Source: Leucoraja ocellata (Eukaryota). Taken from it: a stretch of 64,000 nucleotides of DNA. A program made the position numbers and the translations under genes. Shown one piece after another: positions 40,862 through 62,406 of this stretch (the first letter of the stretch is position 1; the number at the start of each line of letters is the position of its first letter). The notes under the pieces are model-generated. The model was given only the letters and a program-made list of their open reading frames with translations, was not told the DNA's origin and ran no database searches. The stretch covers positions 3,410,001-3,474,000 of the forward strand of contig JAWMAR010000203.1 in NCBI GenBank assembly GCA_036785375.1, written 5' to 3'.

Positions 40862-40910
40862 ATGTCATCGTTTGCAAAATTCATCTCCACACTCTGCCTC
40901 TTTCTCCCAG
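40862..40910 (+). CDS. Gene B exon 1: signal peptide
   Basis: aaaATG; MSSFAKFISTLCLFLP(G); perfect donor CAG|gtaagt in phase 1. The leader is completed by GSAVG in exon 2. Confidence 0.85.
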
Positions 40911-41697
40911 GTAAGTCATTCATGTTCACCCTTACTAACCCCTGTTCACGTTGTCTTCCGATAACTTATTTCTTTCTATCCCTTTTGCACTAATGTTTGT
41001 TGCTTTTTTGCCGTCTTGTAGAAATGTCATGTGTAATTTATGTTCAATTTGTTTTTGAATATGTGTTTGTTTCAGTGTAAGTGCATGTGATGCTGTTGCA
41101 AGCAAGATTTTAATTTAGACACAAAAGCAGAAATTGAACATGTAGTTAAAATAAGTTTGTCAGAAAGTTAACTTTAATTTAAGACTAAATTTAAGCGAAG
41201 GGTTCCGACCCGAAATGTCACCCGTCATTTTTCTCCAGAGATGCTGCGTGACCCGCTGAGTTACTCCAGCACCTAGTGTCTATCTTAAATATAAGTGACA
41301 CAAGGAACTATAGAATAATGTAAGTTTACATGAGGACGTTAACGCAAATAAATGTAAGAGACGCAAGAAATGCAGATGCTGGAATCTTGAACAAAACACA
41401 GTACTGGAGTAACTCAGCGGGTCAGGCAGCATCTCTGGAGAACATGGACAGGTCACGTTTCGCGTCGCGACCTTTCTTCGCATATGTTCTCCAGAGATGC
41501 TACTAGCGTCTCCAGCACTTTGTGTCTGTCTTCGATATAGATCAGCATCTGCAGTTCCTTCCTACACAGGTGGTTACAGGTGAGAGGGGGGGGGGGGGGG
41601 GGGTTAATTGGGCCTGGACCTCGCTGTCCTTGTGCCCATGATAGTAAACTCGAGTTACTCGGAAGGCGTCGTTAACTATGTTCACTTTCCGTGCCAG

Positions 41698-42027
41698 GGT
41701 CCGCTGTCGGTGTGAGGGTGAACCAGTCTCCTGCTGCTCTGACACTTCTCCGAGGACAGACAGCTACGTTCACCTGCTCCCTGCTACCTGGAGAGGGGGA
41801 GATAGTTTTAATGAGGGAATTCTGGTTTCGGACGAAAGACAACCCGGAGCTCTGGGACAACAAGACCGAGAGTTTTCTGAAGACAGGCGACCGACTGTTC
41901 GTGTCCCTGGGCTCGCTGGTCATTCGGGAGGTGACTGTGCACGATGCAGACACTTACCATTGTGTGGTACTGATACATGATATCTGGAAAAAGTTTACAG
42001 GAAACGGAACCACATTACATATCCAAG
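41698..42027 (+). CDS. Gene B exon 2: germline-joined VJ-type IgV domain (NKp30/antigen-receptor-like)
   Basis: Phase 1-1. (G)SAVGVRVNQSPAALTLLRGQTATFTCSLLPGEGEIVLMREFWFRTKDNPELWDNKTESFLKTGDRLFVSLGSLVIREVTVHDADTYHCVVLIHDIWKKFTGNGTTLHIQ has QSP, B-strand Cys, WFR, DADTYHC and J-like GNGTTLHI, then AAG|gtaatt. Confidence 0.93.
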
Positions 42028-42724
42028 GTAATTAATATAGAACATACAACAGGAACAGGCCCTTCAGCCCACAATGTTCGTGCGGACCATGAGGCCAAGT
42101 TAAACTAACTTGTATATTCATGTGTCTATCCAAAAGTCTCTTAAACTCTACGATCGAATCTGCCTCCACAGCCACCCCGAGATCTGATGCGATGGAGTTG
42201 GTGAATCGCACGAATCCCAAGTTCCCCAACCCGAAACACCGCCTGTCCATTCTCTCCACAGATGCGGCCTTAACCGCTGAGTTCCTCCAGCATTTTGTGT
42301 TTTGCTTAAGACTGCAGCGCCTGCAGTTCCATGTCTCTACTTCTATTTCATTCCTGCATTTCATCTCTCTCTATTAATGCTCATTTTCCGGCTCAAACCA
42401 GCCCAGTCTGACAAAAGGTCCCGAACTTAAACGTCATATATCCATGATTTCCAGAGATGCTGCCTGACCCGCTGAGTTACTCCAGCGCTTTGAGTCTAAC
42501 TTTGGTAAAAATAAACCTCGCATCTGCAGTTCCTCCTGTCTCCCTAATGATACAAAATAGATAATGAAAACAACCTCAACCTCGGTCGCAGTGTTTATAT
42601 TCCCAATAGTTCTAGTGTTGGCATTTAATTCTCTTGATTTCCTTACAAGCAGGGAGATGGAAACAAAGCCTCTTTGTTTCTCTCAGTTTTCTCTAGATTC
42701 CCTCTTGACCTGACGAGCTGAAGG

Positions 42725-43465
42725 CGTCAAGTTGGGAAAAGGGGAAGTACAACGGGATCTGGGGGTCCTTGTTCATCAGTCTATGAAAGTAAGCATGCGG
42801 GTACAGCAGGCAGTGAAGAAAGCGAATGGCATGTTGGCCTTTATAACAAGAGGGATCGAATATAGGAGCAAAGAGGTCCTTCTGCAGTTGTACAGAGCCC
42901 TAGTGAGACCACACCTGGAGTATTGTGTGTAGTTTTAGTCCTCTAATTAGAGGAAGGACATTCTTGCTGTTGAGGGAGTGCAGCGTAGGTTTACAAGGTT
43001 AATTCCAGGATGGCGGGGCTGTCATATGCTGAGAGAATGGAGCAGCTGGGTTTGTACCCTCTGGAGTTTAGAAGGATGAGAAGGCATCTCATTGAAACAT
43101 GTAAGATTGTTAAAGGCTTGAACACGCTAGAGGCAGGTAACATGTTCCAGATGTTGGGGGAATCCAGAACCAGGGGCACAGTTTAAGAGTAAGGAGTAAG
43201 GCATTTAGAACGAAGAAACACTTTTTCTCAAAGAGAGTGGTGAGCCTGTGGAATTATCTGCCTCTGAGGGAGGTGGAGGCAGGTTCTCTGGATGCTTTCA
43301 AGTGAGAGCTAGATAGAGCTCTTAAAAATAGCGGAGTCATGGGATATGGGGAAAAGGCAGGAACGGGGTACTGATTGGGGATGATCAGCCATGATCACAT
43401 TGAATGGCGGTGCTGGCTGGAAGGGCCAAATGGCCTACTCCTGCACTTATTGTTTATTGTCTATT
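42725..43465 (+). mobile_element. CR1 3' fragment in gene B intron 2
   Basis: RDLGVLVH...LYRALVRPHLEYC and CR1 3' UTR. Confidence 0.85.
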
Positions 43466-44799
43466 GAGTAACAGCGGGTCAGGCAGCATCTCTGGAGATC
43501 ATGGATAGGTGACGTCTCAGTACGGGGCCCTACTACAGACTGTGAGAGAGGTTATTACAGAACTGCTGTCGGAGAGAGGAGGATAACTTCTTCAAAGAAG
43601 GCATACCTTGAGGAATTTCACAGTGGAGCAGACAAATGTAGACACTGGATTATACCACTCAGCGGGTCAGGCAGCACCTCTGTAGATCATAGAGAGGTGA
43701 CATTTAGGGTCAGGGCCCTTCGTCAGCCTGGGTTGGTTTGTGCCTCAACGTGCACATTAATAGAGAGAAATAAAATGCAGGAAGGGAAATTTACCGATTC
43801 ACATTGAAGGCTTCCAGTCGAAACCCTGACCCTGAGACACAAGGAACTGAAGGGGTTGGTTGAAACAAAGACGCAAAGTGCTGGAGTAACTAATCGAGTC
43901 AGGCAGCATCTCTGGAGAACATGGACCGTTATTCTCTTCCCACGAATCAGGCCTGTCCGGCTGAATATTTATATGTTCTGTTTTAGATGTCCATCATCTG
44001 CTTGGATTTAGTTTACCGTCTACATATTCACTTCCATTTCATGCATTAAAACACACAAAGTGCTGGAGGAACTCGGCAGGTCCGGCAGCATCTGTGGAAT
44101 GAATGGCGATTCAGACCGAAGAATGGTCCCGACCCGAAACACCGCCTGTCCATTTCGCCCGCTGATTCACTGTGATTATGGCTGATCATCCACAGTCAGT
44201 ACCCCGTTCCTGCCTTCTCCCCATATCCATGGACTCCGCTATCTTTAAGAGCTCTATAACTCTCTCTTAAAAGCATCCAGAGAATTGGCCTCCACCGCCT
44301 TCTGAGGCAGAGAATTCCGCAGATTCACAACTCTCTGGGAGAAATGTTTTTCCTCATCTCCATTCTAAATGGCTTACTCCTTATTCTTAAAAATTCCAGC
44401 ATCTCCAATTCCTTGTCTCCACTTCCATTTCATTCGCTTCCTGTATTTTTCTTTCTTATTGTGCATTTTGAGACACAGACTGAAGAGATGTAGTCTGTAG
44501 ATGTAACCCGACCCGAAACATCACATATCATCCATGAAGAGTTACTCCAGCACTTTGTGTCTCGTCAGCTATCCATGTTCTCCAGAGATGCCGACTGACC
44601 CTCTGAGTTACTCCAGTACTTGTGCCTTTCTTTGGTATAAACCAGCGTTTGCAGCTCCTCTTTATTCCGCTAATAATCCATTGAATAACTTGGTTGCTCC
44701 TTAAGCAGGTGCACGGCGTGCCGTGTCATCATAGTTGCTCCATGCATGACTGAGAGCGACAGGAAGATTCACAGCGTGTTATTTTCCTACTTTACGCAG

Positions 44800-45099
44800 C
44801 GAAGCCTGACATCTCCCTGACCCTGGATCCCGGGATAGAAGGCGCAGAGACGCGGAGCCTGACTTGTGTGGCCGCCGGATTCTTCCCGAGGGAGCTGAAC
44901 ATGTCCTGGGCTGTCGTGGGCCAGTTGTCCTATGAAACAGAAGCGGGGCCGCTGAGGGAGAATGAGGATGGAAGCTTCAACGTGAGCTCCCGGCTGCGGC
45001 TCACCGGCCCTCGGCTAGAGGCGGGCATGGTCGTCACCTGCCTGGTTCAGCACCTCACGGGGACGGGCTCAGTGAGCGAACGTTTCCCTCCCATCCCAA
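44800..45099 (+). CDS. Gene B exon 3: C1-set Ig domain
   Basis: Acceptor ttttcctactttacgcag, donor CAA|gtaagt, phase 1-1. (A)KPDISLTLDPGIEGAETRSLTCVAAGFFPRELNMSWAVVGQLSYETEAGPLRENEDGSFNVSSRLRLTGPRLEAGMVVTCLVQHLTGTGSVSERFPPIP shows C1 hallmarks C.A.GFFP, N.DGSF...S.L and C.V.H. Confidence 0.93.
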
Positions 45100-45961
45100 G
45101 TAAGTGGCTTGAATGAACGTGGCAGCCAGCGTCCTCCAATTACTGAAGATACACAGAGTGCTGGAGTAACTCAGCGGCTCAGTTACTGCCGAGTTACTCC
45201 AACATGTTGTGTCTATCTGCGCTGTAAACTAGCATCTACAGGTCCTTCCTACACATGTCCAAGGTTGCAAGGTTTAATAGTACATGTGTACACATTTGTT
45301 AAACGGAGCCACAATGAACTGCAGATTCAAGATTACAAAAAAGACACAACGTGCTGAAGTAACTCAGTAGCGTGTAGTAGCATCTCTGGAGAACGTTGAA
45401 CACAATTCATAAACCTGATCAAAAGTGTATAAGATCACTCAATGTGTACAATATCAACCGCAAATATGTATTTAGACTTTCAGACTTTAGAGATACGCGG
45501 GAAAAGGCATTTCGGCCGATCAGCGATCACCTCATACACTGGCTAGACAAACACACGCTGGAGGAACTCAGCGGGTGAGGCCGCATCTATGTAGAGAAGG
45601 ATATGCGACGTTTCGGGTCGAGACCCTTCTTCTTAAACACATCATACACTAACACTATCCTGTACATTGGGGACAATTTACAATTTTACCGAAGCCAATT
45701 AACCTACAAACTCGTACGTCTTTGGAGTGTGGGAGGAAACCGGAGCACCCGGAAAAAAACCCACACAGGTCACGGGAAGAACGTACAGACTCCGCACATC
45801 CAACACCCGGAGTCAGTATTGAACCCGCGTCTAATGCGCTGTAATGCAGCAACTCAAGTACAGTTCATTTGTGCATCGATATATATATATATATCTTTCT
45901 TCATTATTATTTGAAACATTTACCGTTACAATACGGCGTAAGTGCTTTATCATATCAATAT

Positions 45962-46330
45962 ATTAACCATATAACCATATAACAATTACAGCACGGAAAC
46001 AGGCCATCTCGGCCCTACAAGTCCTTGCCGAACAACTTTTTATCCTTAGTCCCACCTGCCTGCACTCATACCATAACCCTCCATTCCCTTCTCATCCATA
46101 TGCCTATCCAATTTATTTTTAAATGATACCAACGAACCTGCCTCCCCCACTTCCACTGGAAGCTCATTCCACACCGCTACCACTCTCTGAGTAAAGAGGT
46201 TCCCCCTCATGTTACCCCTAAACTTCTGTCCCTTAATTCTGAAGTCATGTCCTCTTGTTTGAATCTTCCCTATTCTCAAAGGGAAAAGCTTATCCACATC
46301 AACTCTGTCTATCCCTCTCATCATTTTAAA
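45962..46330 (-). mobile_element. CR1 3' fragment
   Basis: ORF 46046-46324 is almost identical to the CR1 end at ~19660-20012. Confidence 0.85.
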
Positions 46331-46657
46331 ATGATGATATTATTTAATACATCTTGTACCCTGTATTTTAACGGTAAATATCTCAAATAATAATGGAAGT
46401 TGAAGAAAGATGTATAAAATTGATACTCGAGAAACTGCAGATGCTGGAATCTTGAGCTGGAGGAACTCAGCATCTGTGGAGGGAATGGACATGAGTCGTT
46501 TCGGGTCGGGACCCTTAGCTCACAGATGCTGCCTGACCCACTTAGTTCCCCCAGCACTTTGTGTTTTGCTCAAGATTCCGGCATCTGTGGTTCCTTGTGT
46601 CTGCAAATTTCATATTGTTTAATTAATTTAATTTATTCTGCGTTCATCGACGCACAG

Positions 46658-46683
46658 ATGGAATCTCGACAAAAAGGGTTTAG
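46658..46683 (+). CDS. Gene B candidate mini-exon ending in an in-frame stop
   Basis: Acceptor tttattctgcgttcatcgacgcacag and donor TAG|gtaaat. In the C1 frame it reads (N)GISTKRV*. Confidence 0.35.
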
Positions 46684-47759
46684 GTAAATATATAAACTAT
46701 AAACAAACGCAGCGGGTCAAGCAGCATCTGTGGAGGTTATGAACAGACGATGTTTCAGACTGACGAAGGTTCCCGATCCAAACATCGTCTGTCCTTTCCC
46801 CCCACAGATGCTGCCTGACCCGCTGAGTACCTCCAACACGTTGTGTTTTGCTCTAGATTCCAGCATCTGCAGTTCCTTGTATCTCCATAAACTATACACA
46901 ATACTTAATTATTTCCACTTCAATTTCACTCCCGGTGCCCCACCTGTTATAGTGTTGCTGTTAAATCAACTTGGTTTCCTTACAAGGACAGTGGAATATG
47001 GTGGAACGGTGGGAAAGGGGCACAAATTGCTGGAGTAACTCAGCGGGTCAGGCAGTATCTCTAGAGAACATGGATAGATGATGTTTCGGGTCAGGACCCT
47101 TCTTCAGACTGAATATTATATTATGAAATATTGTAATGTACACGACTCCTATGAAGGCAGCGTTGTGATGTTGCTAAATTTTCTAATGATACAAAGACAG
47201 ATAGGAACGTTGATTGTGGATAGAATATATGAACAAGAAAATAGATGTGAAGTGTAGCATAATGTGGAGGGAAAAAAGCAAAATTGTATATTGTGATGAG
47301 AAAACAAAAGCTTTTTGCTGCATCTCAGTCCATGTAACAATAAACTAAACTAAATTAAAACAAAAAAGTTAAAAAGAGTTCTGACACAGGTTTTGACCTG
47401 AAACGATGAATCTGATTTTCTCTTCACAAATCCTCATGATCTTAGGAGCATTTAAAGTTTTTATTGAGGGTGGTGTGAGCTGGATCATGCTGCCAGGGGT
47501 GGTGGGGGATGCAGATGCGATTTGTGGTGTTAGAGGTTAGAGGTTTTGATAGGCACATGGAATTGCAGGGAATGGAGGGATATGGATGATATGCAAACAG
47601 AGATTAGTTTAACTTGGCATCATGTTCTTCATGGACATTGTGGGCTGAAGGACCTGTTCCTGAATTGGTATATGTTCTACTTTAGAGTAGTTTACTTGTT
47701 TTCATTGGTCTATCTTTGGTATAAACCAGCATCAGCATTTCTTTCCTACATTCTCTATC

Positions 47760-50700
47760 TATCTGTCTGAAAAAGGGTTGCGACCCGAAACGTCACCTAC
47801 AGTATTTCTTTCCTTTAGAGATGCTGACTGAACCGCTGAGTTACTACAGCACTTTGTGTTTATCTTCTGATTTTTATTTACTTTTGAAATTATTGCCACT
47901 TTTCCCCCAGGAATATCACCCTGGAAAAAATGTCCCTGCAACCACAAGAGATGCAACACCTGTCCCTATACCATCTCCCTCGACTCCGTCCCAGGATCCC
48001 GGTAATCCTTTCAGGTTAAGCAGAGGTTCACTTGCATCTCCTCCAACCTCACCTACTGTATCTGTTGTTCAAGATGTGGACTCTTATATATTGGCGAGAC
48101 CAAATGTAGACTGGGCCATCATTTCGCTGAACACCTTCTCTCAGTCCGCCTGGCCCTACCTGATCTCCCAGTTGCTAAACACATTTAATTCTCCTTCTCA
48201 TTCCCGCTCTAACCTTTCTGTTCTAGGCCTCCTCCATTATCAAAGTGAGGTTAAATGGAAATTGGAGGAATGGCCCTATTTATTCTCGGTGATGGAAACA
48301 TTTCAACTGGGTGAGACGTTTTGCACATGGGTTAAGCTTTTATACACTAACCCAACAGCTAGAATACTGACAAATCAAATGTTATCAACAAAATTTGATT
48401 TATCTAAAGGTTTCAGACAAGGATGCCCGTTATCTCCATTATTATTCACCCTTGCTATTGAACCACTAGCAGAAAGTGTTCGAGCACATCCAGTAATATA
48501 TGGGTATAATACTAAAAATACAGTTAATAAAATCTCTCTATATGCAGACGATGTATTACTATATATTGCAAACCCAGAAATCAGCATTCCAAACTTGTTA
48601 AATCTTGTAACTCAATTTGGTTTATTTTCAGGATATGGAATTAATTGGAATAAAAGTGAGATTATGCCAAGTTATATATATTGCAACAATCACCTTTCAG
48701 AATAGTCAAACAAAAATGTAAATACCTAGGAATTTATGTGACCATGAAATATACTTCTTTATTTAAATCAAATTTCATGCCTTTACTTAATAAATTGCAT
48801 AAGAATATTCAATATTGGAAAACACTTCTCATTTCAATGCTCGGTAGATTTAACGCTATAAAAATGATTTTCTTCTGCAATTGCTATACCGTTTACAATC
48901 AATTCCTATAAATCTCCCAAAATATTTATTTTAAAAAGTTGACTATAGTGACAAGTTTTATTTGGAATTATAAGAACCATAGAATAAGGAAAACACACTT
49001 ATGCAAATCCAAGACCAAAGGAGGATTAGTTTTACCAATTTTTTAATTGTACTTTTGGGCAGTCAATGTCAAAAATATGAATTTTTGGTTGGAAGATATG
49101 GATCAACAACCAGACTGGTTAAAAATGGAAAAGGAAGACTGTTTGCCTTTTGAAATTGGTCCGATTCTGTTAGCTCCCACAAAATTGAATTAAAAAATCT
49201 ATAGTGAAAACCCTATAATATATTCGGGCCGCCCTCACGGGTATTCGAATTTGGAAACAACCAAAAAAGACATTAAAATTGGATAATTTATCATTTTCTC
49301 TCCCCATTGCAAATAACCCTTCATTTAAACCCTCAGTGTTGGATAAAGGTTTTTTTACAATGGAAAAATCATGGAATTAAAAAGATGGGACATCTTTATA
49401 GAAATTGTATTTTTCTCTCGTTTGAGGAGTTACAACAGAATTACGGATTACATTCAAATAATTTTTTTAGATATTTACAACTTAAAGATTATGTTAAATC
49501 ACATACACGAGAACACAGAACCAGAGAACCAGAGATTTGAGATGAATGTTTGAATAAACACCCTAACACAGTCAAATTAATATCTTACATTTATAATACT
49601 TTTATAGACAGTGAGAATCCGTCGACGGAATTATACAGAGCAGCATGGGAAAAGGAATTAGCTCAACCTATAACGAAAGATATTTGGGACGAAAGCCTAC
49701 AACATATACACCAATGTTCGTTAAATGCCATACATTCTTTAATACAATTTAAAGCACTACATAGACTGCATTATTCTAAAACAAAATTAAATAGAATGTT
49801 TCCTAATATCTCTCCTATCTGTGATAAATGTCAATCCCACGTGGCTAATTCAACCCATACTTTTGTAAACTGTAGTAAAATTAAAAATTACTGGATGGAT
49901 ATTTTCAAAATAATCTCTGTAGTCGTCAATATCTAAATGGATCCCAATCCTAAATTAATAATATTGGGCATATCAGAACAATACCTAAAACTCACAATAA
50001 ACCAAATAAATTTCCTTGATTACAGTATAATAATTGGGAAAAAATTGATATTAAAATTTTGGAAAAACCCAACAACCCCCACAATCAAGATGTGGATTAT
50101 GGAGATGTCGGAGATTACATTTGGAAAAAATTAGATTTGTCTTAATTGACAAACCAGAATTATTTACTAGAATATGGTCTCCATTTATAGATTATTTGAA
50201 GGGGTAGATCGGACTAGTGCGGAGGCCGGACTGAAGCCTAAACCCAGGACTAGATGAATAGTTATGTTCTCTGGCCCCAAATTGTATTATTGATAGTTTA
50301 TCCTATTTTTCTAATTTCCTTCTTTCTTTCTTTCCTTTTCCTATCTATAAATATAAATAAATAATTAGAGGCAATGTTAACATGTAACCGATAAAGGAGG
50401 ATCCCAGCTACTTTGGTAACTGGCACCCTGGAAACCTGGATATTTAATATGTGACCATTAAACAAAGTCTGTACGGATTATGATATGCAGATGCCTCTAA
50501 TAAAAAATGTATTTTAAAAAAAAAGGAAATTGGAGGAACAACATCTCATATTACGCTTGGGCAGCTTACAACCCAGGGGTATGAATATTGATTTCTCTAA
50601 CTTCAAGTAACCCTTGCATTCCCTCTCGCTTTCCATCCCTCCCCATCCAAGTCACAACAGTTTTTTGTTCTCACCTAGCTACAGCTAACAATGACCTGTT

Positions 50701-53043: not shown

Positions 53044-53086
53044 AAACCCTAGTGGTTTGTGAAATGTTTCACTTCTCACTAAACAG

Positions 53087-53327
53087 CTCGCTAATTTACA
53101 ACACTTATCGAGTCCACACCCAAGATTACAAGTTGTTCAGCCACAGCCATACAATGATGTCTGCCTTGTGCTTGTTGTGCTTCTTGTGCGTGATGGTGGA
53201 AGATTGGTGGAAACAGGGCCGCGACGTGAACACTCTTTCCTTGACCCCATTTACAACACGTTATATTGCGGTCATTTACAACACAAAGATCCAATCTTTA
53301 CCCCAGTAACAGTAAACTTAGTGAATA
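53087..53327 (+). CDS. Gene B candidate optional extracellular exon (80 codons, unknown fold)
   Basis: Unique DNA, acceptor tttcacttctcactaaacag, donor ATA|gtaaga. Open in phase 0 to 1: LANLQHLSSPHPRLQVVQPQPYNDVCLVLVVLLVRDGGRLVETGPRREHSFLDPIYNTLYCGHLQHKDPIFTPVTVNLVN. Confidence 0.35.
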
Positions 53328-54230
53328 GTAAGAATGTTAGTCTATGAATAGAATAATGTAGATTTTCTCCTCTGAAAGGCCTATCTCATTTCTTTAAGTA
53401 TAGATATTTGTAGAACTAGAATATTAAGTGATAATCAAGGAGTATCTATAGTAACATTGACTTCTCTAACTTCGTAGCCCTTGCTTTCCCTCTCTCTCCA
53501 TCACCTCCCTATTCCCAGTTCTCCTACCAGTCTTTCTGTCTCTGACTACATTTTATCTCTGTACTGCCCACTTCCCTGACATCAGTCTGAAGAAGAGTCC
53601 CAACCAGAAAAGTCACCCATTCCTTCTCTCCAGAGATGCTGTCTGTTCCGCTGAGTTACTCCAGCAGTTTGTGTTTGCCTTCGATTTAAACCAACATCTG
53701 CAGTTCTTTCATACACATATCTATATTAACAGACATATTGGTAATATTTACCATGGAATTCCTGCAGAATAAAATCCCATTGACATATTTCACAAGAGCA
53801 ATATATCGGAAATATTAGATTTTAATATATTTCTGTTTCAATTGTCTGTGCGGAGATTGCATGTTTTAGCTGTGACCGCGTGGGTTTCCTCCGGGTGCTC
53901 CGGTTTCCTCGCACGTCCAAAAGACATAAAGGTTTGTAGTTCAATTGGTCCCTGCACATTGCCTCTAGTGTGTAGAGAGTGGATGTGAAAGGGTGATAAC
54001 ATACAACTGGTGTAAACGGATGATCGATAGTCAGCGTGGACTCTGCGGGTTGAAGCACCAGGTTCTATCTGTGTTTCTAATCAAAATTAAACTAAATGAC
54101 ATACATAATTAATGTTTCATGTAACAGTGCATTTAAATGATTTAATGTAATGTAACATGCAATAGTCATGATTATATTTGCTATTCATTGTAGCATTATT
54201 TTGATTCATATTTCAATTGTGATTTTCAAG

Positions 54231-54332
54231 GATCCTCCAAGTATTATTTCATTCGACTGAGTCTGATCCTAATAGTACCAATATGGGTCTTGATTGTGTA
54301 TCATTATCACAATAAATTGAAGAAAGGAAAAG
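54231..54332 (+). CDS. Gene B transmembrane exon with charged Arg
   Basis: Acceptor tttcaattgtgattttcaag, donor AAG|gtattg, phase 1-1. (R)SSKYYFIRLSLILIVPIWVLIVYHYHNKLKKGK is a hydrophobic span followed by a basic stop-transfer cluster. Confidence 0.8.
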
Positions 54333-54954
54333 GTATTGTATACATTGTACATTTTATTTTGTAATTTAACTAAAAACTGAGTATATAAAAGTGAATATTG
54401 TCTTTAGTTCCAGAGAGATTAAAATAATTTAAACAAAATGAGGGTGACAGCTTGTAGAGCTGCTGCCTCACAGCGCTAGAGATCCAGGTTAGAAACATAG
54501 AAACATAGACAATAGGTGCAGGAGTGGGCCATTCAGCCCTTCGAGCCTGCACCACCATTCAATGTGATCATGACTGATCATCTAAAATCCGTACACCGTT
54601 CTTGCTTTTTCACCATATCCCTTGATTCCTTTAGCCCTAAGAAATAAATCTAACTCGCTCTTGAATCCTGACTACGGGTGCTGACTTTGTGTAGAGTTTG
54701 CATGTTCTCCCTGTGACCACTTGGATTTCCTCAGAGTGCTTTGTTTTTCTCCCACATCCCAAAGATGTGTGGGTTTGTAGGTTAATTGACCCTGTGTAAA
54801 TTGCCCCTAGTGTGCAGGGAGTGGATGTGAAAATGGGATAATGTAGAACTAGTCCGAACAGGTGATCGATGGTCGGCGTAGACGCGGTGGGCTGAATGGC
54901 CTGTTTCTGTCCTGTATCTCTGAAATACACTAAATATTCATGATATTTTTATAG

Positions 54955-55022
54955 AATCATCTGTCCATGATGCAACTGTTGATATTCAAAGCATGAGAAA
55001 CCGAAATAACTCAGTAAATGAG
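54955..55022 (+). CDS. Gene B cytoplasmic exon
   Basis: Acceptor atatttttatag, strong donor GAG|gtgagt, phase 1-0; (E)SSVHDATVDIQSMRNRNNSVNE. Confidence 0.75.
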
Positions 55023-55099
55023 GTGAGTAATTTAGTTTGATATTTACCCTTATGTTGCATGCACGATGTTCTAATGTACACTGCGGTATTGTCAGCTTA

Positions 55100-56015
55100 T
55101 ATGAACAAATTCATCAGCACTATTGGATGTAATGGACTTTGTGGTTTTGCAGATAGTGAAGATGATTGTGAAAGATTGTAGCCGGATTGGCCAGGTGGGC
55201 AGAGGAATGGTTGATGGCATTTAATACAGAGAAGTGTGAGGTGTTGTATTTTGGGATGTGAAACAAGGGCATTACCTACACAGTAAATGGTAGGCCTCTG
55301 GGTAATATTGTAGAGTAGAGGCATCTACCTGGGACTCGACCATGGTTCGTTGAAGGTCGAGTCGCAGGTAGATAAGGTGGTCGAAAAGGCTTTTGGCACT
55401 TTGGCCTTCATCAGTCAAAGTATTGAGTATCGAAGCTAAGAGGTCATGTTGTAGTTGTATAAGACGTTGATGAGACGGCATTTAGAATATTGTGTTCAGT
55501 TTTGGGCACTATGTTAGAGGAAAGATATTGTCAAGCTTGAAAGGTTTCAGAAAATATTTATGAGGATGTTGCCAGGACTAGAGGGTGTGAGCTACAGGTA
55601 GAGATTGAGTAGGCTGGGTCCCTATTCCATGGAGCACAGGAGGATGATGGGAGATCTTATAGAGGTATAAATAATCATGAGAGGAATAGATCGGGCAGAT
55701 GCACAGAGGCTCTTGCCCAAAGTAGGGGAATCGAGGACCAGAGGACATAGGTTCAAGGTGAAGGGGAAAAGATTTAATAGGAATCCGAGGGGTATCTTTT
55801 ACACACAAAGGATGGTGGATGTATGGAACAAGCTGCCAGAGCAGATGCTATCCCATCGTTTAAGAAACAGTTCGACAGGTAAATGGATAGGGCGGGTTTG
55901 GAGGGTTATGGACCAAGCGCAGGCAAGTGGGACTAGTGCAGCTGGGACATTGTTGGCCGGTGTGGGCGAGTTGGGCCAAAGGGCCTGTTTCCACACTGTA
56001 TCTCTCTCTATGTCT
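55100..56015 (+). mobile_element. Old CR1/HER1-type 3' fragment
   Basis: Degenerate RT C-terminus; ORF 55677-56021 TRGHRFKVKG...WNKLP. Confidence 0.8.
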
Positions 56016-56286
56016 CTATAACACAAGACATTCTGCGGCACGGTGGTGCAGTGGGAGTGTTGCTGTCTCATAGCTGAGTCGCACGTTACGAATTAGCACA
56101 AGAGGTACCCCGAGTTAAAACTCGTGGTAATAACGTACGATTAACGTACCAAATTCGTAGACGTAACTTAGAGACTCGTGGCGCTAACGGCAGGTACTCG
56201 AGAAACTTGTCAACTCTTGCAAAAAGTCAAACATGTTTAAAATTTTCCACGAGTCAATTTTACCCTTGTGGTTAGGAATTGAAACA

Positions 56287-57175
56287 ACGTACGACATACG
56301 CTCATCCAATTTAAAACATTACATAGATTATATTATTCAAAAACTAAATTAAATAAAATCTTCCCTAATGTTTCACCAATCTGTGATAAATGCCTGTGTC
56401 AAGAAGCTACCATAGCGCACTCTTTTGTTTTTTGTACAAAAATCCAAAAATTCTGGTATGAAATATTTGATATTTTTTCAAAATTAGTCAAAATAAAACT
56501 GGTACCAAAACCAGAATGGATTATCTTTGGAATATCGGAAGGTAACCCTGAACTAAACGTGCTTCAGAAGAATGTATTTAATTACGGGCTAATAATGGGA
56601 AAAAAGCTTATACTTAAATTCTGGAAAAATGCGCCCATACCAACAATAAAAATGTGGATATCAAATATGTTTGAAACATTACATCTGGAAGAGATGAAAT
56701 TCCTCTTAGCAGGTAAAGCAGACCAATTCCAAAAGACGTGGTCTATGTTTCTGGCATCTCTATTACAAGTATGAGGTGCAATAGTAATTTAAATAAATAA
56801 ATAAATGGTATCAGGACCTGGTAACGGGAGGTAAAACAACAAAAACAGACTTGGTTGGTAGTCCCCTTTCTGCGGAGTTTAATGTTATAATAGAGCGATT
56901 GTTCCTATTTTCTTTTTCTTTCTTTTCTAGGGTCTATTTTCTCACTTTACTTCCTTCTCTAACTTCTTTTCTAAGGGCTTTCTTTTCCCAACACTCTTGC
57001 ACTTCACGACTCTTGCGCACTTTCTTTATTTGCCTTACTTCTATCTTTTTCTTAAAGCTCAAAAAAAATGAAGCGGTACAAAAAATGTATTAAGATATAT
57101 GTGTTGTGTAGTATTGTAATTTACCGTACTTCTAATAAAAATAAAATAAAATAAAAAAATTAATTAAAAAAAAAA
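56287..57175 (+). mobile_element. L1-clade 3' fragment with poly(A)
   Basis: CDKC knuckle, KKLILKFWK similarity to 48271-50524 and A-rich tail. 11-bp TSD GAATTGAAACA (56276-86, 57176-86). Confidence 0.85.
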
Positions 57176-57317
57176 GAATTGAAACATTTTAACTTGTAAG
57201 AACGTAGTGGCCCGTGCGTTTACCTTAGTGTATCGTGAGTCTACCGTGGGAACTCTTTAACTCAGCGGGCAGGCAGCAGCAGATTGTCGCTCCCTTCAGT
57301 TTCCCAGCGACAATCAC

Positions 57318-58501
57318 CTGCCATAACGCGAGAGAGATCATGCACTGTTGTAGGTCTCCTTTGCACGTCGGTGTTTCTGTCTTTCTCCACTCATTGTTGA
57401 CCCTATCTGTCACCACCCCCACCTACACCCCTCTGCTTCCCGGCCATGTGTGTGACCCCTTCCCTCCCCTCTCCAGCTCCCCGCCCATTACACCAGCGTG
57501 GGGGCTTTGCACTGTCTTCACGGCGGCGATGCCAGCGGGTTAGTGCCAATCGCCCCGGGGCAGTCGCTCCCTTCAGTTTCCCAGGGGGTCGAGATAGGAC
57601 TGGAGTTGGGAGGGAAAGGTGGGGGGGTGGGGGGGTTAGGTGAGCAGGAGAGTGGAGTTGTTTGCAGTTGCAGAGGAAGGGGGCAAGGGCGGTACAGTTC
57701 CCAGTCTCTGCTCCTGCCCAGGGGGGTGGCCGGAGACGTCAGGACCAACGAGACACCGACCCCCAGGCCCACCAGGCCCACTGCAAGCACGGAGAACCCA
57801 GAGACCCACAGCCAACAGCAACTCCAGCCCAGTCCCGCTCCAACTCCAGAGGAACCCGCTCCCCGTAGGGTCAGAAGCTGATGGTGTGCAAGGTACGTCT
57901 TGTTCTTGGGATGGCGGATGAGGGGGCGCAGCTCGGGCTATGGGCGAACTGCCACTTGTCGCCGTAGCAGCCCATCGGGAGCGAGGCTGGGCTGGAGTTG
58001 CTGTTGGCTATGGGTCTCTGGGTTCTCCGTGCTTGCAGTGGGCCTGGTGGGCCTGGGGGTCGGTGTCCCGTTGGCCCTGACGTCTCAGGCCACCACCCTG
58101 GGTAGAAGCTGAGACGGAACTGTACCGCCCTTGCCCCCTCCCTCTGCAACTGCAAACAACCCCACTCTCCTGGCCACCTAACCCCCCCCCCCCCCCCTCA
58201 CCTTTTCCTCCCAACTCCAGTCCCGTCCCGACCCCCTGGGAAACTGAAGGGAGCGACTGCCCCGGGGCGACTGGCACTGACCTGCTGGCATCGCCGACGT
58301 GAAGACAGTGCAAAGCCCCCTCGCTGGTGCAATGGGCGGGGAGCTGGAGAGGGGAGGGAAGGGTCACACACATGGCCGGGAAGCAAAGGGGTGTAGGTGG
58401 GGGTGGTGACAGATAGGGCCAACAATGAGTGGAGAAAGACAGAAACACCGACGTGCAAAGGAGACCTACAACAGTGCATGATCTCTCTCGTGTTATGGCA
58501 G
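57318..58501. repeat. Long inverted repeat (foldback) element
   Basis: Arms ~57318-57832 and ~57985-58501 are reverse complements; sequence shared with 4584-5310. Confidence 0.85.
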
Positions 58502-61500
58502 CTGTTCCTGAAGCTAAAGCCTTGGGATCGTTGCCCTTCGTGTTGGCGTGGAGGGGGAGGGGGAGAGGGTATTGTGCTGTTTGATCGCCCCCTGCTATCC
58601 CAGGGACAGGGAGACACAGCGGCTTTTGAGACTGGTGGGCAATCACGTCTAAAGTGTGTGCCCATACAGTCAGTACACCTCTCCTACACTTGTCTCCACC
58701 TCTCCTACACCTGCCTCCACCACTTCCACTGGAAGCTCATTCCACACCGCTACCACTCTCTGAGTAAAGAAGTTCCCCCTCATGTTACCCCTAAACCTCT
58801 GTCCCTTAATTCGTGGGTTTTCTCCGGGTGCTCCCGTTTCCTCTCATTCTTCAAATTGGCTTCTGTAAAAACTATCACTAGTGTGTAGGATAGTGCTAGT
58901 GCAGGGGTTAATCGCTGTTCGGCACGGACTCGGTGGGCCGAAGGGCCTGTTTCCGCACTGTTTCTCTAAAGTCTAGTGCATCTGCAGTTCCTTGTGTCAG
59001 CAAAACCGAATTGTCGCTGTCCTTTTTCAATCGAGAGAATTTTTCAATGCATTTAACTTGTTTGCCGTTTCCTTCCATCAGCTGGAATTATACTGCCAAC
59101 AAAGTGAGATCCATATTCCAAAACACACTTCCTCTTCAAGGAGGCCTTGTGGTCAACTGCATACCAGTCATTGGACATTGCTCGTGCAATGAGTTTCGTT
59201 GTTAATAACCAGTTGAAGAAGTGATGTTGCTACTAATATGCGTTGGATTCCATTCTCTTCAACTAAATCTACTATGCGTAAAATGACCTCAAGTGCCTGG
59301 TTTACTCATTATAGTGAATGCAGGGTCTTTTACCCAGGATAGGGAAATCTGGCTGCATTATTCAAGCACTTTGGGGTTTTTTCCAAGCCACCATCTGCAG
59401 TTCCTTGCGTATTTATTAAAGAAGTTCGGTTCTGTTACTTTTTTGAGTAAGAAAGAACTTCAGATGCTGGTAAAAATCAAAGGTTTTGATCAGTCTGAAG
59501 AAGGATCTCGACCCCATTCCTTCTCTCCAGAGATGCTGCCTCACCGGCTGAGTTACTCCTGCATTTTGTGTCTATCTTCTGTTACTTTTTTATTCTTCTA
59601 CTCTGTGAAGACTTTAAGCTCGGAGTATAATTCCAGGGTCTCATTGTCCTCAATGTTATCTCTCACTTCTTCAAGTGTATATCCTAGCGTTGATGAAATG
59701 ACATATCTTGACCAAGTCTGATTAGACTTTAGAGATACAGTGTGGAAACAGGACATTTGGCCCACCGAGTCCGCACCGACCAGCAATCACCTCTTTCACT
59801 AGCGCGATCCTACACACTAGGGACATTTTAGAAATTTACCAAAGCCAATTAACCTACAAACCTGTATGTCTTTGGAGTGTGGGAGGAAACTGGAGAATCT
59901 GGAGATCCCACGCGATCAAGGGGAGAACATATAAACTTTGTACAGACAGCACCTGTAGTCGGGATTAAAACCAGGTCTCTGCCGCTGTGAGGCAGCAACT
60001 CTACCGCTGCGCCAATGTGCCCCCTAATCATGCAGAGTTTTGCACATGACATTAGTTGCACTCCTCAGGCTGACTTTCACCTCCGTATCATTTTAGACAC
60101 ACAAAACCTGATAGCGCGCGACAAACAAAACAGCTGTTAATCTTGTCCTTTTAGAGTTGGTCAGATTATAGCAGGCACAGATATTCCCTACACACTGGGG
60201 GCAATTTACAGAAGACCACAAACCCGCACGTCTTTGTGACATGGGAGGAAATTAGAGCATGGATGAATTAATTAACTCTGTCCGATATCTTTCCCTGGAC
60301 ACCCCGTACTTAATGTGCAGCAGCTGAAAGTGATGGGTTTTCTCCTTAAACAGCTCAGTGAGTGGTTGCATGAGTTTTTGCAGTTGGAGGTCACTTCAGT
60401 AAAATATGAATTGCCAGCGCAAAGTTCTCTGATTCTAGCAATATTCCACCGTCATATCACACTGTCCCCTGCCAACAACAATCCCATCAATACCAACCTG
60501 CCTGAGGTCATTTGTTGCCGGCCCTGATTTGTCCCAGTCTTTGCTTACTTTCAGCCCCCCCCCCCCCCCAGTCTGAAGAAGAGTCCCAATCTGAAACGTC
60601 ACCTGTCCACCACATAGACGTTGTCTGTCTCGTTGAGTTTGTGTCTATCTGATTCTAGCAAGCTTTGTTGTTGGGAAAACTGAATGCAATGGACTGGCCA
60701 TTGTTAAGATCAGAAAATGACCCAAAGACTCAACGGTCAGGCAGTATCTGTGCTGAATATGGATAGATAAGTTTCCTCGACGGTGAAACTGATGAGAAGG
60801 TTGGTTGACCCTGTTAAGGGACAAGAGTGTTATCATTTGTTGTCATATACACTGACAACAGAACAATAACATTCTTATTTGCAGCAGCATAACAAGCCTG
60901 TAAACACAAGGCATACAAAGAATATATAGCAAACAAAAATGCAATCCATTGCAAAACCCCACAAAGTGTGTAGTGCAACTAAAGACAGTTTAGTTGATGT
61001 TGTGCAGAGTTCATGAGCCTGATGGTTGGTGGAAATAAGCTGTTCCTGAACCTGGACATTGCTGTTCACACATTCCTGTACCTTCTTCCTGATAGCAGGA
61101 ATGAAATGAAAGCATGGCCAGAGTGCTGTGGGTCTCTGATGTTATTGGTTGACTTTTTGAGGCAGCGCCTCCTGCAGATCCCTTCGATGTTGGGACGGTC
61201 TCTTCCTGCGATGGACTAGGCAGTGCCCACCTCTCTTTGTAACCTGCTTCATTCCTGGGTGATGTTGACAATGATATCAGTGAAACAGATATTGCCCACA
61301 AGTGTCACATGCCCACCGATCACTGACTAGTCCATGGACACACACATCCACACTTTAGCTTTTGCCCATTTGGTGTTTACTAATCAAATTCGTTACTGAT
61401 TTCACATGACTTTTCAATATAAATCAGGAACAGAGCCTCATTATAATTCATAAATTATAAATTATAAATCAGGAACAGAATACCTCATTAGATTCAGCTA

Positions 61501-61509
61501 AAAATAAAA

Positions 61510-62310
61510 TGACCATAAGATCATCAGACATAGTAGCAGAATTAGGTCATTCAGTCCATCGAGTCTGCTCCAACATTCACTCATGGCTGATCTAATTTTC
61601 CCTCTCAACCAATACTCCTGCCTTCTCACCGTAATCTTTGACACCCGTACTAATCAAGAATCTATCATTCTCCGCTTTAAAATGATCCAATGTCTTGGCC
61701 TCTACCACTGACTGCGCTAATGAATTCCACAGATTCACCACCATCTGGCTAAATAAATCCTCTCATCTCCGTTCTATTGTTATCCAAAATGTTCTAAAGT
61801 TCTAAAATTCCTCCGCTCCTCCAATTCTAAAATGAAGAAAATATCTTTCTAACCATAAGTTGGAATGTCTACAGAGACGATTTACGATGATGTTGACAGG
61901 ACTTGAGGGAGAGGTTGAGCAGGCTTGGACTCCCTGGAGCACAGGAGGATAAGGGGCGATCTTATGGAGGTGTATAAAATCATAATGGGAATAAGTGGGT
62001 GAATGCACGGAGTTTTTATAGCCAAAGGGAATTGAGAAATAGAAGGCATATGTTTAATGTGAGAAGGAAAAACCTGAGGGGCAACTTTATCATTCAGGGT
62101 ATATGTGGGTATATGGAACGAGCCGCCGGAGGACGTGGTTGGGGCAGGGACTACAACACCATTTAAAAGATATTTGGACAGGTACATGGACACAAAAGGT
62201 TTAGAGGGACTAGTGCCAACCGCGGGTAAATGGGACTATCTTAGATGGGGCATCTTGGTCGGCGTAGACGAGTTGGGCCGATGGGTCTGTTTCCGTGCTC
62301 TATAACTATG
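61510..62310. mobile_element. CR1 3' fragments in opposite orientations
   Basis: CR1 3' UTR and WNE.PE.VV.A motifs. Confidence 0.7.
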
Positions 62311-62370
62311 ATATCAACTCTGTAACACTAATATTTGCAAGTGGTTCTTATTGTTATTTTTGTGTTGCAG

Positions 62371-62406
62371 GATAATGTTTCAATAAACTATGAAAATCTG
62401 CATTAG
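62371..62406 (+). CDS. Gene B terminal coding exon with ITIM
   Basis: Strong acceptor ttattgttatttttgtgttgcag. Phase 0 gives DNVSINYENLH*; INYENL fits (I/V/L/S)xYxx(L/V). Confidence 0.75.
   Translation, partial: DNVSINYENLH

What the first reader, a model, noticed from the sequence alone, without database searches (positions are those of the whole stretch)
40862..62406. Non-rearranging antigen-receptor-like gene: leader-VJ-C1-TM-cytoplasmic tail (294 aa)
Seen: six exons with canonical splice sites and compatible phases (1,1,1,1,0) join into an 885-nt ORF. The V exon contains its own J-like strand (FTGNGTTLHI) followed directly by a splice donor, with no RSS heptamer/nonamer. The next exon is a clear C1-set domain. 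Known: VJ plus C1 is the architecture of TCR chains and Ig light chains. C1 domains are largely restricted to Ig, TCR, MHC, B2M, tapasin, SIRP and B7-H6. NKp30/NCR3 has a germline VJ ending TGNGT but no C1. Inference: a germline-encoded receptor resembling the proposed pre-RAG antigen-receptor ancestor, possibly an uncharacterised chondrichthyan family. The ORF track shows only fragments of it.
Basis: partly seen in the sequence, partly recalled or inferred. Interest (0 to 1): 0.9.

Follow-up and report, generated by a model that had tools for sequence, protein, structure and literature searches.

The report
SIRP-like immune receptor with cut tail
This is a real six-exon gene for a cell-surface immune receptor of a SIRP-like kind shared by sharks and rays, and this copy ends at a stop codon exactly where its relatives carry the key tyrosine of their inhibitory tail.

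Summary
The six-exon model is confirmed. It has 885 nt, phases 1,1,1,1,0 and 5 of 5 GT-AG introns. The V exon is V-set with an in-exon J-like strand and no RSS. The next exon is C1-set. One contig of run X4, from a related organism, joins V to C1 across the 2.8-kb intron. The other junctions rest on homology alone.

The gene is not an orphan. It belongs to a family found in more than 15 elasmobranch species. NCBI names members inconsistently, as SIRP-beta-1-like, SIRP-alpha-like, Ig kappa-like or TCR-beta-like. I found no paper on the family. Its best colinear solved match is SIRP-alpha D1-D2. The family has ITIM/ITSM-tailed forms and Arg-TM short-tailed forms.

New here: the TAG at 62404-62406 replaces the first ITIM tyrosine, which is Tyr in 14 of 14 homologues. 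The old tail lies decaying downstream. The TM carries Arg where 14 of 14 homologues have Leu. This is the route by which activating KIR arose from inhibitory KIR.

The scan noted many other VJ-C1 receptors elsewhere in this genome (unchecked). My verdict is a new member of a known kind, of moderate interest.

The parts
40862..40910 (+). Exon 1: ATG and most of a split leader (MSSFAKFISTLCLFLP + 1 nt), donor gtaagt
   Evidence: It aligns to homologue leaders such as MSLLGNLLYTLWLFLP|G. No read support: X4 depth is 0 in bin 40761-40921.
41698..42027 (+). Exon 2: end of the leader plus a V-set domain with its own J-like G strand. It has 2 Cys and 3 N-glycosylation sequons.
   Evidence: Pfam V-set 2.9e-7. 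65% identity to Pristis P0001. X4 contig covers 41725-41980. No RSS.
41994..42023 (+). J-like motif FTGNGTTLHI (G-x-G-T-x-L-x-I) inside the V exon
   Evidence: The G-x-G-T motif is kept in most homologues. It aligns to GAGTELSV of SIRP-alpha.
44800..45099 (+). Exon 3: C1-set domain with FFP, 13 residues between Cys and Trp, and C-L-V-Q-H
   Evidence: Pfam C1-set 5.7e-13. Hallmarks counted against the criteria of PMC2785349. X4 contig covers 44798-45100.
54231..54332 (+). Exon 4: stalk, transmembrane segment and basic stop-transfer (SSKYYFIRLSLILIVPIWVLIVYHYHNKLKKGK)
   Evidence: tblastn with P0001 E 1.1e-4, P0006 2.0e-4, P0003 0.003. Alignment. No read evidence.
54254..54256 (+). [quoted passage not shown]
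   Evidence: 14 of 14 homologue sequences (11 species) that use this TM exon have Leu in this column.
54955..55022 (+). Exon 5: cytoplasmic spacer (SSVHDATVDIQSMRNRNNSVNE), acceptor tttttatag, donor gtgagt
   Evidence: It aligns to GK(D/E)SS.HDKNVD.Q...SVN(E/K) of homologues. tblastn alone is weak (E 1.2).
62371..62406 (+). Exon 6 as translated: DNVSINYENLH then TAG. It contains a newly arisen ITIM-like I-N-Y-E-N-L.
   Evidence: It aligns to (V/S)NVSLS(N/S)E(N/T)L(Q/H)Y of homologues.
62404..62406 (+). TAG stop in the codon that is the membrane-proximal ITIM tyrosine in relatives
   Evidence: 14 of 14 homologue sequences that reach this exon have Tyr here (L-H/Q-Y-A-x-V). APV follows the stop in frame.
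62407..62502 (+). Untranslated relic of the old tail, still open and conserved (APVYCKKGQQRQELRWTEQPQETEYAVLKVKD, with an ITSM-like TEYAVL)
   Evidence: tblastn with P0002 over 62362-62502, E 2.4e-7. Alignments.
62503..62713 (+). A/T-rich insertion of about 211-214 nt that splits KVKD|KNNL. GAT lies on both sides and TAA comes at once.
   Evidence: Read from the sequence against the homologues' contiguous KVKDKNN. It is not repeated elsewhere in the window.
62714..62831 (+). Distal relic of the tail: DKNNL, then a 5-nt loss that shifts the frame, then YEEPVTYSTV...TTHSSLKQH
   Evidence: sequence. tblastn with P0002 over 62727-62828, E 6.2e-5. Alignment.

Best explanation
This is a type I membrane receptor gene of a batoid. 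It belongs to an elasmobranch-wide family of SIRP-like receptors built as split leader, germline VJ domain, one C1-set domain, TM and tail. In typical members the V domain binds a still unknown ligand through CDR-like loops and the C1 domain acts as a spacer. Their tail carries a membrane-proximal ITIM (L-x-Y-A-x-V), an ITSM-like T-E-Y-A-x-L and up to two further tyrosine motifs, which would recruit SH2 phosphatases. Partner genes or forms with nearly the same ectodomain have an Arg-bearing TM and a short tail, so the family is a paired inhibitory/activating system like SIRP-alpha/beta. [quoted passage not shown] Inferred: this copy has switched, or is switching, from inhibitory to adaptor-coupled activating signalling. 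By the position and type of the basic residue, the partner would be an FcR-gamma-like ITAM dimer. The family already has activating forms built on a different TM exon, so this would be a second, independent route.
For: Gene structure and junction residues. Domains. The C1 hallmarks of PMC2785349 are met. V-C1 splicing: X4 record 9. X4 covers the V and C1 exon bins (about 25-40) but not the unique intron bins (0-2.3). 17 of its 21 listed differences recur in DNA contigs of X1/X5/X6 that run into this locus's own introns, so it is the orthologue's transcript. Family: phmmer of the V exon gave P0001 at 4.4e-33. 16 of 16 hits and 17 of 17 hits are elasmobranch family members, named. Paired forms: P0041 (ITIM tail) against P0042 (Arg-TM, 260 aa) share one 90% cluster in Pristis; P0050 and P0052 are similar. 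Stop at the ITIM Tyr, 14 of 14 Tyr; TM Arg, 14 of 14 Leu. Relic tail with an insertion and a 5-nt loss. [quoted passage not shown] FcR-gamma partners carry Arg in the N-terminal TM segment (PMC1440944, passages). SIRP-alpha D1-D2 is the best single colinear stretch, 70.8 bits.
Against: Only one contig of one run, from a relative, shows splicing. That run is not on record as RNA. No read evidence exists for the TM and tail exons, for exon 1, or for the TAG itself. The Arg lies near the outer edge of the hydrophobic stretch and may snorkel rather than pair with an adaptor. The 32 codons after the TAG are intact and TEYAVLKVKD is perfectly conserved, so the TAG is recent and could be a null allele, a polymorphism or an error. 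A new Tyr makes an ITIM-like INYENL two residues before the end, which argues against a purely activating reading. The window's V and C1 branches are long (0.67 and 0.56 against medians of about 0.08), which also fits relaxed constraint. SIRP kinship is not secure. The V exon alone finds VNAR, Ig light chains and NKp30 but no SIRP among 58 solved hits. The tail finds nothing outside the family. Synteny could not be tested.
Confidence: 0.5

Rival explanations
1. Decaying gene or null allele. An inhibitory receptor recently lost its tail through a nonsense mutation. The TM Arg and the fast-evolving ectodomain are signs of relaxed constraint, not of a new function.
For: Long terminal branches. 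Mostly nonsynonymous differences to relatives. Tail lesions. A relative's contig (X6) shows 7 extra letters inside the C1 exon at 44853-44855 (table 4), which may be a frameshift there.
Against: All 885 nt upstream of the stop are open, with 5 of 5 canonical introns and junction residues as in relatives. The orthologue is transcribed and spliced in a relative. The two changes are exactly the pair that converts signalling in KIR.
Confidence: 0.22
2. Still inhibitory, or dual. The new C-terminal I-N-Y-E-N-L acts as a replacement ITIM (or as a pY-x-N Grb2-type site), so the chain combines a TM Arg with an inhibitory motif, as another first-stage note proposes.
For: INYENL fits (I/V/L/S)xYxx(L/V/I). 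Only one change (Asn to Tyr) was needed, because relatives already have Leu at -2 and +3 (P0041 SLSNENLQY).
Against: The Tyr is absent from 14 of 14 relatives, so there is no conservation. The motif ends one residue before the C-terminus. A single such motif arises easily by chance.
Confidence: 0.1
3. The stop is not real in the population, being an assembly error or a rare allele. The true product then runs on to ...TEYAVLKVKD and stops at the insertion, giving an inhibitory receptor with an ITIM plus an ITSM-like motif.
For: 62407-62502 is open and highly conserved. TAG is one base from TAC or TAT.
Against: Nothing in my calls shows a different base there.
Confidence: 0.1
4. The family is not SIRP kin. 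It would be a separate old lineage of non-rearranging antigen-receptor-like chains, nearer to UrIg/UrIg2 or to NKp30 with an added C1. The neighbouring B7/butyrophilin-like gene might then be its ligand, as with NKp30 and B7H6.
For: The best whole-chain solved hit of the C1 exon and of the family profile is UrIg2. The V exon hits VNAR, IgL and NKp30 but not SIRP. It has a split leader, as antigen-receptor genes do (PMC12227049). A B7/BTN-type V exon and IgC exon lie 29-33 kb upstream.
Against: The UrIg2 score is a sum over three C1 domains (at most 28.2 bits each for the exon). The best single colinear stretch is SIRP-alpha (70.8 against 61.0 bits), sharing GTEL..AKP, PRD and C.V.HVT. There is one C1, a TM and an ITIM tail, unlike UrIg (secreted, 3 C) and UrIg2 (9-11 C).
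Confidence: 0.15

Closest known systems
SIRP family (SIRP-alpha, SIRP-beta, SIRP-gamma)
   Same: A V-set domain with a J-like G-x-G-T-E-L strand joined through AKP to a C1-set domain. Type I membrane protein. Paired forms: an ITIM-rich tail against a basic TM residue with a short tail. Best colinear solved match. NCBI names most homologues SIRP-like. SIRP features are taken from PMC2785349 and PMC12975943.
   Different: One C1 domain instead of two (two in Hypanus and Mobula by exon duplication). The V exon alone does not retrieve SIRP. The tail has no detectable kin outside elasmobranchs. The basic residue is Arg near the outer TM edge, not the SIRP-beta type that binds DAP12. Ligand and synteny are unknown.
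UrIg and UrIg2 (non-rearranging shark VJ-C1 genes; PMC12227049, Introduction and UrIg2 section read)
   Same: Split leader, single-exon VJ, true C1 domains, found only in elasmobranchs. UrIg2 is the top solved hit by summed score.
   Different: UrIg is secreted with 3 C domains and is a disulfide-linked dimer. UrIg2 has 9-11 C domains. This gene has one C1, no spare Cys and an ITIM-type tail in its relatives.
NKp30 / NCR3
   Same: A germline VJ domain with a T-G-N-G-T motif. Solved NKp30 chains match at E 1.5e-4 to 3.5e-4. A TM Arg (recalled for human NKp30, not from a call).
   Different: NKp30 has no C domain. Here a C1 exon is spliced directly to V.
Short-tailed activating KIR derived from inhibitory KIR (PMC2213150, passages)
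   Same: The same two changes: a basic residue introduced into the TM and a stop codon inside the membrane-proximal ITIM, leaving the old tail sequence downstream.
   Different: An unrelated ectodomain (KIR has C2/I-type Ig domains). KIR uses a central Lys and DAP12. Here an N-terminal Arg points, by the rule in PMC1440944, to an FcR-gamma-like partner.
TCR and Ig light chains
   Same: Leader, V with a J strand, one C1 and (for TCR) a TM. Many solved light chains align over V plus C1.
   Different: There is no RSS and no separate J segment. There is no interchain Cys after the C1. Relatives have an ITIM tail.

Membership tests
SIRP family | N-terminal V-set domain with a J-like G-x-G-T strand encoded in one exon | tested here: met
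   Pfam V-set. FTGNGTTLHI at 41994-42023. It aligns to GAGTELSV of SIRP-alpha.
SIRP family | [quoted passage not shown] | tested here: not met
   Only one C1 exon. tblastn of the C1 exon against the window finds only itself (next best E 0.061). Two C1 domains occur only in the Hypanus and Mobula homologues.
SIRP family | C1 hallmarks: (F/Y)(F/Y/H)P, 13 residues between Cys and Trp, x-V-x-H after the F-strand Cys (PMC2785349) | tested here: met
   FFP, 13 residues, CLVQH.
SIRP family | Paired signalling forms: ITIM tail against basic TM residue with short tail | tested here: met
   At family level: P0041, P0002 and others have ITIM/ITSM tails, while P0042, P0050 and P0052 have an Arg-TM and short tails.
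SIRP family | Sequence kinship of V, C1 and tail to SIRP above other IgSF families | tested here: inconclusive
   Best single colinear stretch is SIRP-alpha at 70.8 bits. C1 exon: SIRP-alpha 4.8e-13, SIRP-gamma 1.9e-12. But 0 of the 58 solved hits of the V exon are SIRP, and the tail search found only family members (7 of 21 candidates).
SIRP family | Orthologous genomic position (SIRP cluster neighbours) and CD47 binding | not testable with these tools
The window holds no recognised SIRP-cluster neighbour. Binding needs the bench.
UrIg / UrIg2 | Single-exon VJ with split leader | tested here: met
   Definition from PMC12227049.
UrIg / UrIg2 | Three (UrIg) or 9-11 (UrIg2) C1-type domains; UrIg is secreted | tested here: not met
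   One C1 exon followed by a TM exon.
NKp30 / NCR3 | A single VJ domain followed by stalk and TM, with no C domain | tested here: not met
   The C1 exon is spliced to V in the X4 contig and is present in all full-length homologues.
Rearranging antigen-receptor chains (TCR, IgL) | Separate V and J segments flanked by RSS heptamer and nonamer | tested here: not met
   The J strand is inside the V exon. There are 0 heptamers or nonamers in 41600-42200.
B7 / butyrophilin | V domain without a J motif plus an IgC domain of the CD80 or BTN type | tested here: not met
   C1-set 49.5 bits, against C2-set_2 at 20.4 bits (below its cut-off of 21) and C2-set_3 at E 0.16.
Activating receptor derived from an inhibitory one (KIR-type switch) | Basic TM residue where inhibitory kin are hydrophobic, and a stop inside the membrane-proximal ITIM | tested here: met
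   Arg against 14 of 14 Leu; TAG against 14 of 14 Tyr. Criterion from PMC2213150.
Activating receptor derived from an inhibitory one (KIR-type switch) | Assembly with an ITAM adaptor through the basic residue | not testable with these tools
   Needs co-expression or co-precipitation with FcR-gamma and DAP12 orthologues.

The most novel reading that the evidence does not exclude
The elasmobranch VJ-C1-TM family is not merely 'SIRP-like'. It would be a distinct, ancient lineage of membrane-bound, non-rearranging antigen-receptor-chain-like genes, sister to SIRP and to the rearranging receptors. That would make it the closest living model of the pre-RAG receptor chain. In this genome it would have expanded into many paired inhibitory and activating genes whose CDR-like loops evolve fast. 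The window would then catch one member in the act of switching signalling mode by the same two mutations that created activating KIR in apes.
Probability: 0.15. Interest if true: 0.75.

Novelty: new member of a known kind. Interest (0 to 1): 0.45.

Why it matters
It shows that V(J)-C1 paired receptors of the SIRP type, with ITIM/ITSM tails and Arg-TM partners, exist throughout sharks and rays. Hatherley et al. [quoted passage not shown] Public annotation names the family in at least six different ways, which shows it has not been curated. It deserves a place beside UrIg, UrIg2 and NCR3 in work on antigen-receptor origins. The window's copy is a clean, datable example of an inhibitory-to-activating switch (stop in the first ITIM, basic TM residue, relic tail). 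It lies about 400 million years away from the KIR and Ly49 cases. It is directly testable by adaptor co-expression.

Tried and rejected
A brute-force search for TM and tail exons by splice sites, phase and hydrophobicity gave 54 exon-4 candidates and hundreds of pairings, nearly all inside repeats. It was of no use on its own. Candidates at 57982 and 59533 were dropped once homologues fixed exon 4 at 54231.

Of 9 open 68-nt exon-5 candidates, only 54955-55022 matches homologues.

I looked for the family's other, Arg-bearing TM exon (as in P0050 and P0052) in the window and found none. The best E was 0.73, and the E 1.0 hit is exon 4 itself.

The word-based protein searches never reached beyond the family. 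These blanks say little. No SIRP, UrIg, NCR3, TCR or IgL sequences could be fetched as ids, so I built no cross-family tree. The trees hold family members only. In them, hits under 70 aa and identical rows were dropped (23 V hits gave 19 rows; 24 C1 hits gave 18 rows).

Names of 10 further V-domain hits were unrelated multi-Ig proteins.

The 211-nt insert is not a repeat within the window, so I cannot call it a transposon.

The search of earlier findings by sequence gave nothing.

Papers not held: PMC6761025, PMC3709836, PMC10530332. What they say about Xenopus VJ-C1 genes, shark NKp30 and UrIg is therefore recalled or second-hand. The gene tables of PMC10751288 and PMC12227049 may list this family.
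Full report
**What is there**

- e1 40862-40910
- e2 41698-42027
- e3 44800-45099
- e4 54231-54332
- e5 54955-55022
- e6 62371-62406

They add up to 885 nt with phases 1,1,1,1,0. All 5 introns are GT-AG with good polypyrimidine acceptors. The four codons split by introns read G, A, R and E. Homologous proteins have these residues at exactly those joints: LFLP-G-xAVG, IQ-A-KPD, x-R-GFSKYY and GK-E/D-xS. I never joined the exons into one sequence.

**Domains**

- The V exon passes Pfam's V-set threshold (31.1 bits, cut-off 26).
- The next exon passes C1-set clearly (49.5 bits, cut-off 21). The CD80-type and BTN-type C models fail (20.4 bits and E 0.16).
- The C1 exon has all three sequence hallmarks that Hatherley et al. 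list for C1-set domains: FFP, exactly 13 residues between the B-strand Cys and the C-strand Trp, and C-x-V-x-H (criteria from PMC2785349, passages).
- The J-like strand FTGNGTTLHI (41994-42023) lies inside the V exon, one codon from the donor.
- No RSS heptamer or nonamer lies in 41600-42200, so the gene cannot rearrange.
- Each domain has only its two canonical cysteines, and the stalk and TM have none. Nothing suggests a disulfide-linked dimer of the TCR, IgL or UrIg type.
- The window holds one copy. tblastn of both exons finds only themselves.

**Reads**

The run search with the V exon listed 9 runs. Six hold part of it, and none is on record as RNA.

- X1, X5 and X6 behave as DNA. Their contigs cross exon-intron borders (for example X1 record 3 at 41844-42103, X6 record 31 at 44587-45175).
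- X4 is only 83 million letters. It has depth 25-40 on the V and C1 bins and 0-2.3 on the unique intron bins.
- Its record 9 (612 letters, depth 40) lies on 41725-41980 and then on 44798-45100, so the 2.8-kb intron is skipped.
- The 51 letters between the two parts do not reach 90% likeness. By length they hold the last 47 nt of the V exon plus 6 more letters, which is an in-frame length difference in the CDR3-like loop.
- 17 of the 21 listed X4 differences also occur in the DNA contigs of X1, X5 or X6, which continue into this locus's own introns. The transcript therefore comes from the orthologue in a related organism, not from a distant paralogue.

Limits of this evidence:
- It is one contig, one run and a relative.
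- The joint is seen in table 8, not among the rows shown in table 5.
- Exon 1 has depth 0 in X4.
- Exons 4-6 were outside the laid stretch.
- A retrocopy in DNA is not formally excluded, although the exon-only coverage of an 83-million-letter run argues for RNA.

**Relatives**

HMMER of the V exon against 1.84 billion representatives gave 40 hits at E ≤ 0.001. The best was P0001 (4.4e-33, 65% identity, 290 aa). Word-based searches with P0001 and with a family profile returned 16 and 17 proteins, all from sharks and rays. The genera are Pristis, Mobula, Hypanus, Hemitrygon, Narcine, Scyliorhinus, Mustelus, Cetorhinus, Stegostoma, Hemiscyllium, Heterodontus and Heptranchias, plus one unnamed entry.

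NCBI's pipeline names them 'signal-regulatory protein beta-1-like', 'tyrosine-protein phosphatase non-receptor type substrate 1-like', 'immunoglobulin kappa light chain-like', 'T cell receptor beta chain MC.7.G5-like', 'Ig heavy chain Mem5-like' or 'uncharacterized'. The family is therefore public but uncurated.

All members are built as leader, VJ, C1, TM and tail. Hypanus and Mobula have a duplicated C1. Local tblastn of five homologues places every exon of the model on the window:

| Exon | E-value |
|---|---|
| V | 2.7e-39 |
| C1 | 1.6e-35 |
| TM | 1.1e-4 |
| exon 5 | 1.2 (weak alone, but colinear) |

In family-only trees the window's C1 falls in the batoid clade (99/99) and its V falls outside the shark clade (98/97). 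Both have long end branches (0.67 and 0.56; medians about 0.08).

**The family is a paired system**

Long forms end in four tyrosine motifs: L-(H/Q)-Y-A-x-V, T-E-Y-A-x-L, V-x-Y-S-x-V and T-x-Y-A-S-L. The last two are already lost in several rays. Short forms (P0042 Pristis, P0050 Mobula, P0052 Hemitrygon) keep almost the same ectodomain. P0042 shares a 90% cluster with P0041. The short forms use a different TM with an Arg (LIP.I.R...) and a tail of a few residues.

**The end of the window's ORF**

In the alignment, the TAG at 62404-62406 sits in the column of the first ITIM tyrosine. All 14 of 14 homologue sequences that reach this exon (11 species) have Tyr there, and the window reads L-H-stop-A-P-V. 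The reading frame stays open for 32 more codons and keeps ETEYAVLKVKD (62407-62502).

Three further changes follow:
- About 211-214 A/T-rich bases (62503-62713) split KVKD from KNNL. GAT lies on both sides and a TAA follows immediately.
- DKNNL follows at 62714-62728.
- A 5-nt loss shifts the frame before YEEPVTYSTV...SSLKQH.

The distal part was probably cut off first by the insertion. The TAG looks recent.

In the TM, CGA (54254-54256) gives Arg where 14 of 14 homologues have Leu. A new Tyr, five residues before the old one, creates I-N-Y-E-N-L.

**How it most likely works**

Shown: a type I receptor chain with a ligand-binding-type V domain on a C1 spacer; loss of the ITIM and ITSM; a basic residue in the outer third of the TM.

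Inferred: an inhibitory-to-activating switch. [quoted passage not shown] Feng et al. found that receptors pairing with FcR-gamma carry Arg in the N-terminal TM segment, whereas DAP12 partners carry a central Lys (PMC1440944, passages). On that rule the window's Arg points to an FcR-gamma-like adaptor. I put this reading at about even odds. The rivals are a null allele or decaying gene, a replacement ITIM, and an unreal stop.

**Variation**

Differences between the window and the four runs are mostly nonsynonymous in the V exon:

| Run | Nonsynonymous : synonymous |
|---|---|
| X4 | 7:4 |
| X1 | 6:1 |
| X5 | 5:2 |
| X6 | 6:3 |

They cluster at residues 31-40, 67-70 and 92-93 of the exon, and the CDR3-like stretch does not align at all. 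In X1 the two V pieces carry 15 differences in 518 letters, against 10 in 954 for five other pieces (Fisher p = 0.011). The counts are small and table 3 was truncated. This fits either diversifying selection on the binding face or relaxed constraint.

**Comparison with known families**

- Among solved structures, the V exon is nearest to shark VNAR (3.5e-6), Ig light chains and NKp30 (1.5e-4). No SIRP is among its 58 hits.
- The C1 exon's top hit is UrIg2 (9.1e-19), but as a sum over three domains of at most 28.2 bits each. It is followed by Ig heavy chains, SIRP-alpha (4.8e-13) and SIRP-gamma (1.9e-12).
- With the family profile, the best single colinear stretch is SIRP-alpha D1-D2 at 70.8 bits over V plus C1. 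It shares GTEL..AKP at the domain joint, PRD in the BC loop and C.V.HVT in strand F. UrIg2 scores 61.0 bits and an Ig lambda chain 47.4 bits.
- The gene works like a SIRP and looks most like one. It fails the two-C1 criterion, however. Its V and tail do not retrieve SIRP, and synteny could not be tested. I therefore call it SIRP-like rather than a SIRP orthologue.
- It is not UrIg or UrIg2 (3 or 9-11 C domains; PMC12227049, Introduction and UrIg2 section read).
- It is not NKp30 (no C domain), not TCR or IgL (no RSS) and not B7/BTN.

**Context**

About 29-33 kb upstream lie a B7-type V exon and a butyrophilin-type IgC exon. The V exon is at 7842-8189 and is closest to VTCN1 (1.8e-10), PD-L1 and BTNL8. 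The IgC exon is at 11726-12034 and matches PF22705 at 1.5e-15.

Other first-stage notes of this scan are unchecked by me. They report further VJ-C1 receptors with inhibitory tails 92 kb and 469 kb beyond the window, an Arg-TM one 626 kb beyond, and clusters on other pieces. In all, 32 notes hold the words. If these are right, this genome carries a large multigene family, and the window's gene is one member of a cluster.

**Literature**

Searches for UrIg, NKp30/shark/C1, SIRP/cartilaginous fish/C1-set, NCR3/shark/B7H6, signal-regulatory protein/shark/ITIM, VJ-C1/PRARP and paired receptor/shark/DAP12 found no paper that describes this family. PMC10751288 (passages) lists NKp30, PRARP and UrIg as the non-rearranging VJ genes, and PMC12227049 does not mention SIRP. 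Three key papers were not held and supplements were closed, so prior description cannot be excluded.

**Verdict**

The new content is the family-wide picture and the stop-at-ITIM plus TM-Arg switch.

Noticed in passing
window 7842-8189 and 11726-12034 (+): A B7-family V exon (best solved match VTCN1/B7-H4 at 1.8e-10, then PD-L1, BTNL8, CD276) and a butyrophilin-type IgC exon (PF22705 at 1.5e-15; BTNL8 at 2.9e-9) lie upstream on the same strand. A B7/BTN-like gene next to a VJ receptor recalls the NKp30-B7H6 pairing. No link was tested.
   Followed up: partly
window 44853-44855, run X6 (table 4): The contig of a related organism carries 7 extra letters inside the C1 exon. This may be a frameshift, meaning a dead orthologue there, or an alignment effect.
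   Followed up: no
window 47821-48705 (+), inside intron 3: A 294-aa ORF with a reverse-transcriptase-like look (YADD motif; recognised by eye, no Pfam run). Intron 3 (9.1 kb) and intron 5 (7.3 kb) are filled with retroelement fragments and a short element recurring as the '...MLPDPLSYSSTLC...' ORFs.
   Followed up: no
window 57235-58665 and 4500-5300: Mirror-image ORFs on both strands (the same peptides, such as SPLHVGVSVFLHSLL) show an inverted duplication of a GC-rich element inside intron 5. Related copies lie near 5 kb.
   Followed up: no
window 33015-34000 and 36094-36751, around the N run 34838-35037: Near-identical ORF sets on both sides of the 200-N gap suggest a duplicated block, or an assembly join, at the gap. 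The Ns were left as they are.
   Followed up: no
window 30000-32100: A GC-rich stretch (0.64) holds long low-complexity Pro/Arg/Ala-rich ORFs on both strands. It looks like a tandem repeat rather than a gene.
   Followed up: no
homologues P0003/P0043 (Hypanus) and P0044 (Mobula): The C1 exon is tandemly duplicated in myliobatiform rays, and the two copies within a species are nearly identical. This is recent duplication or homogenisation, as reported for UrIg2 C domains.
   Followed up: partly
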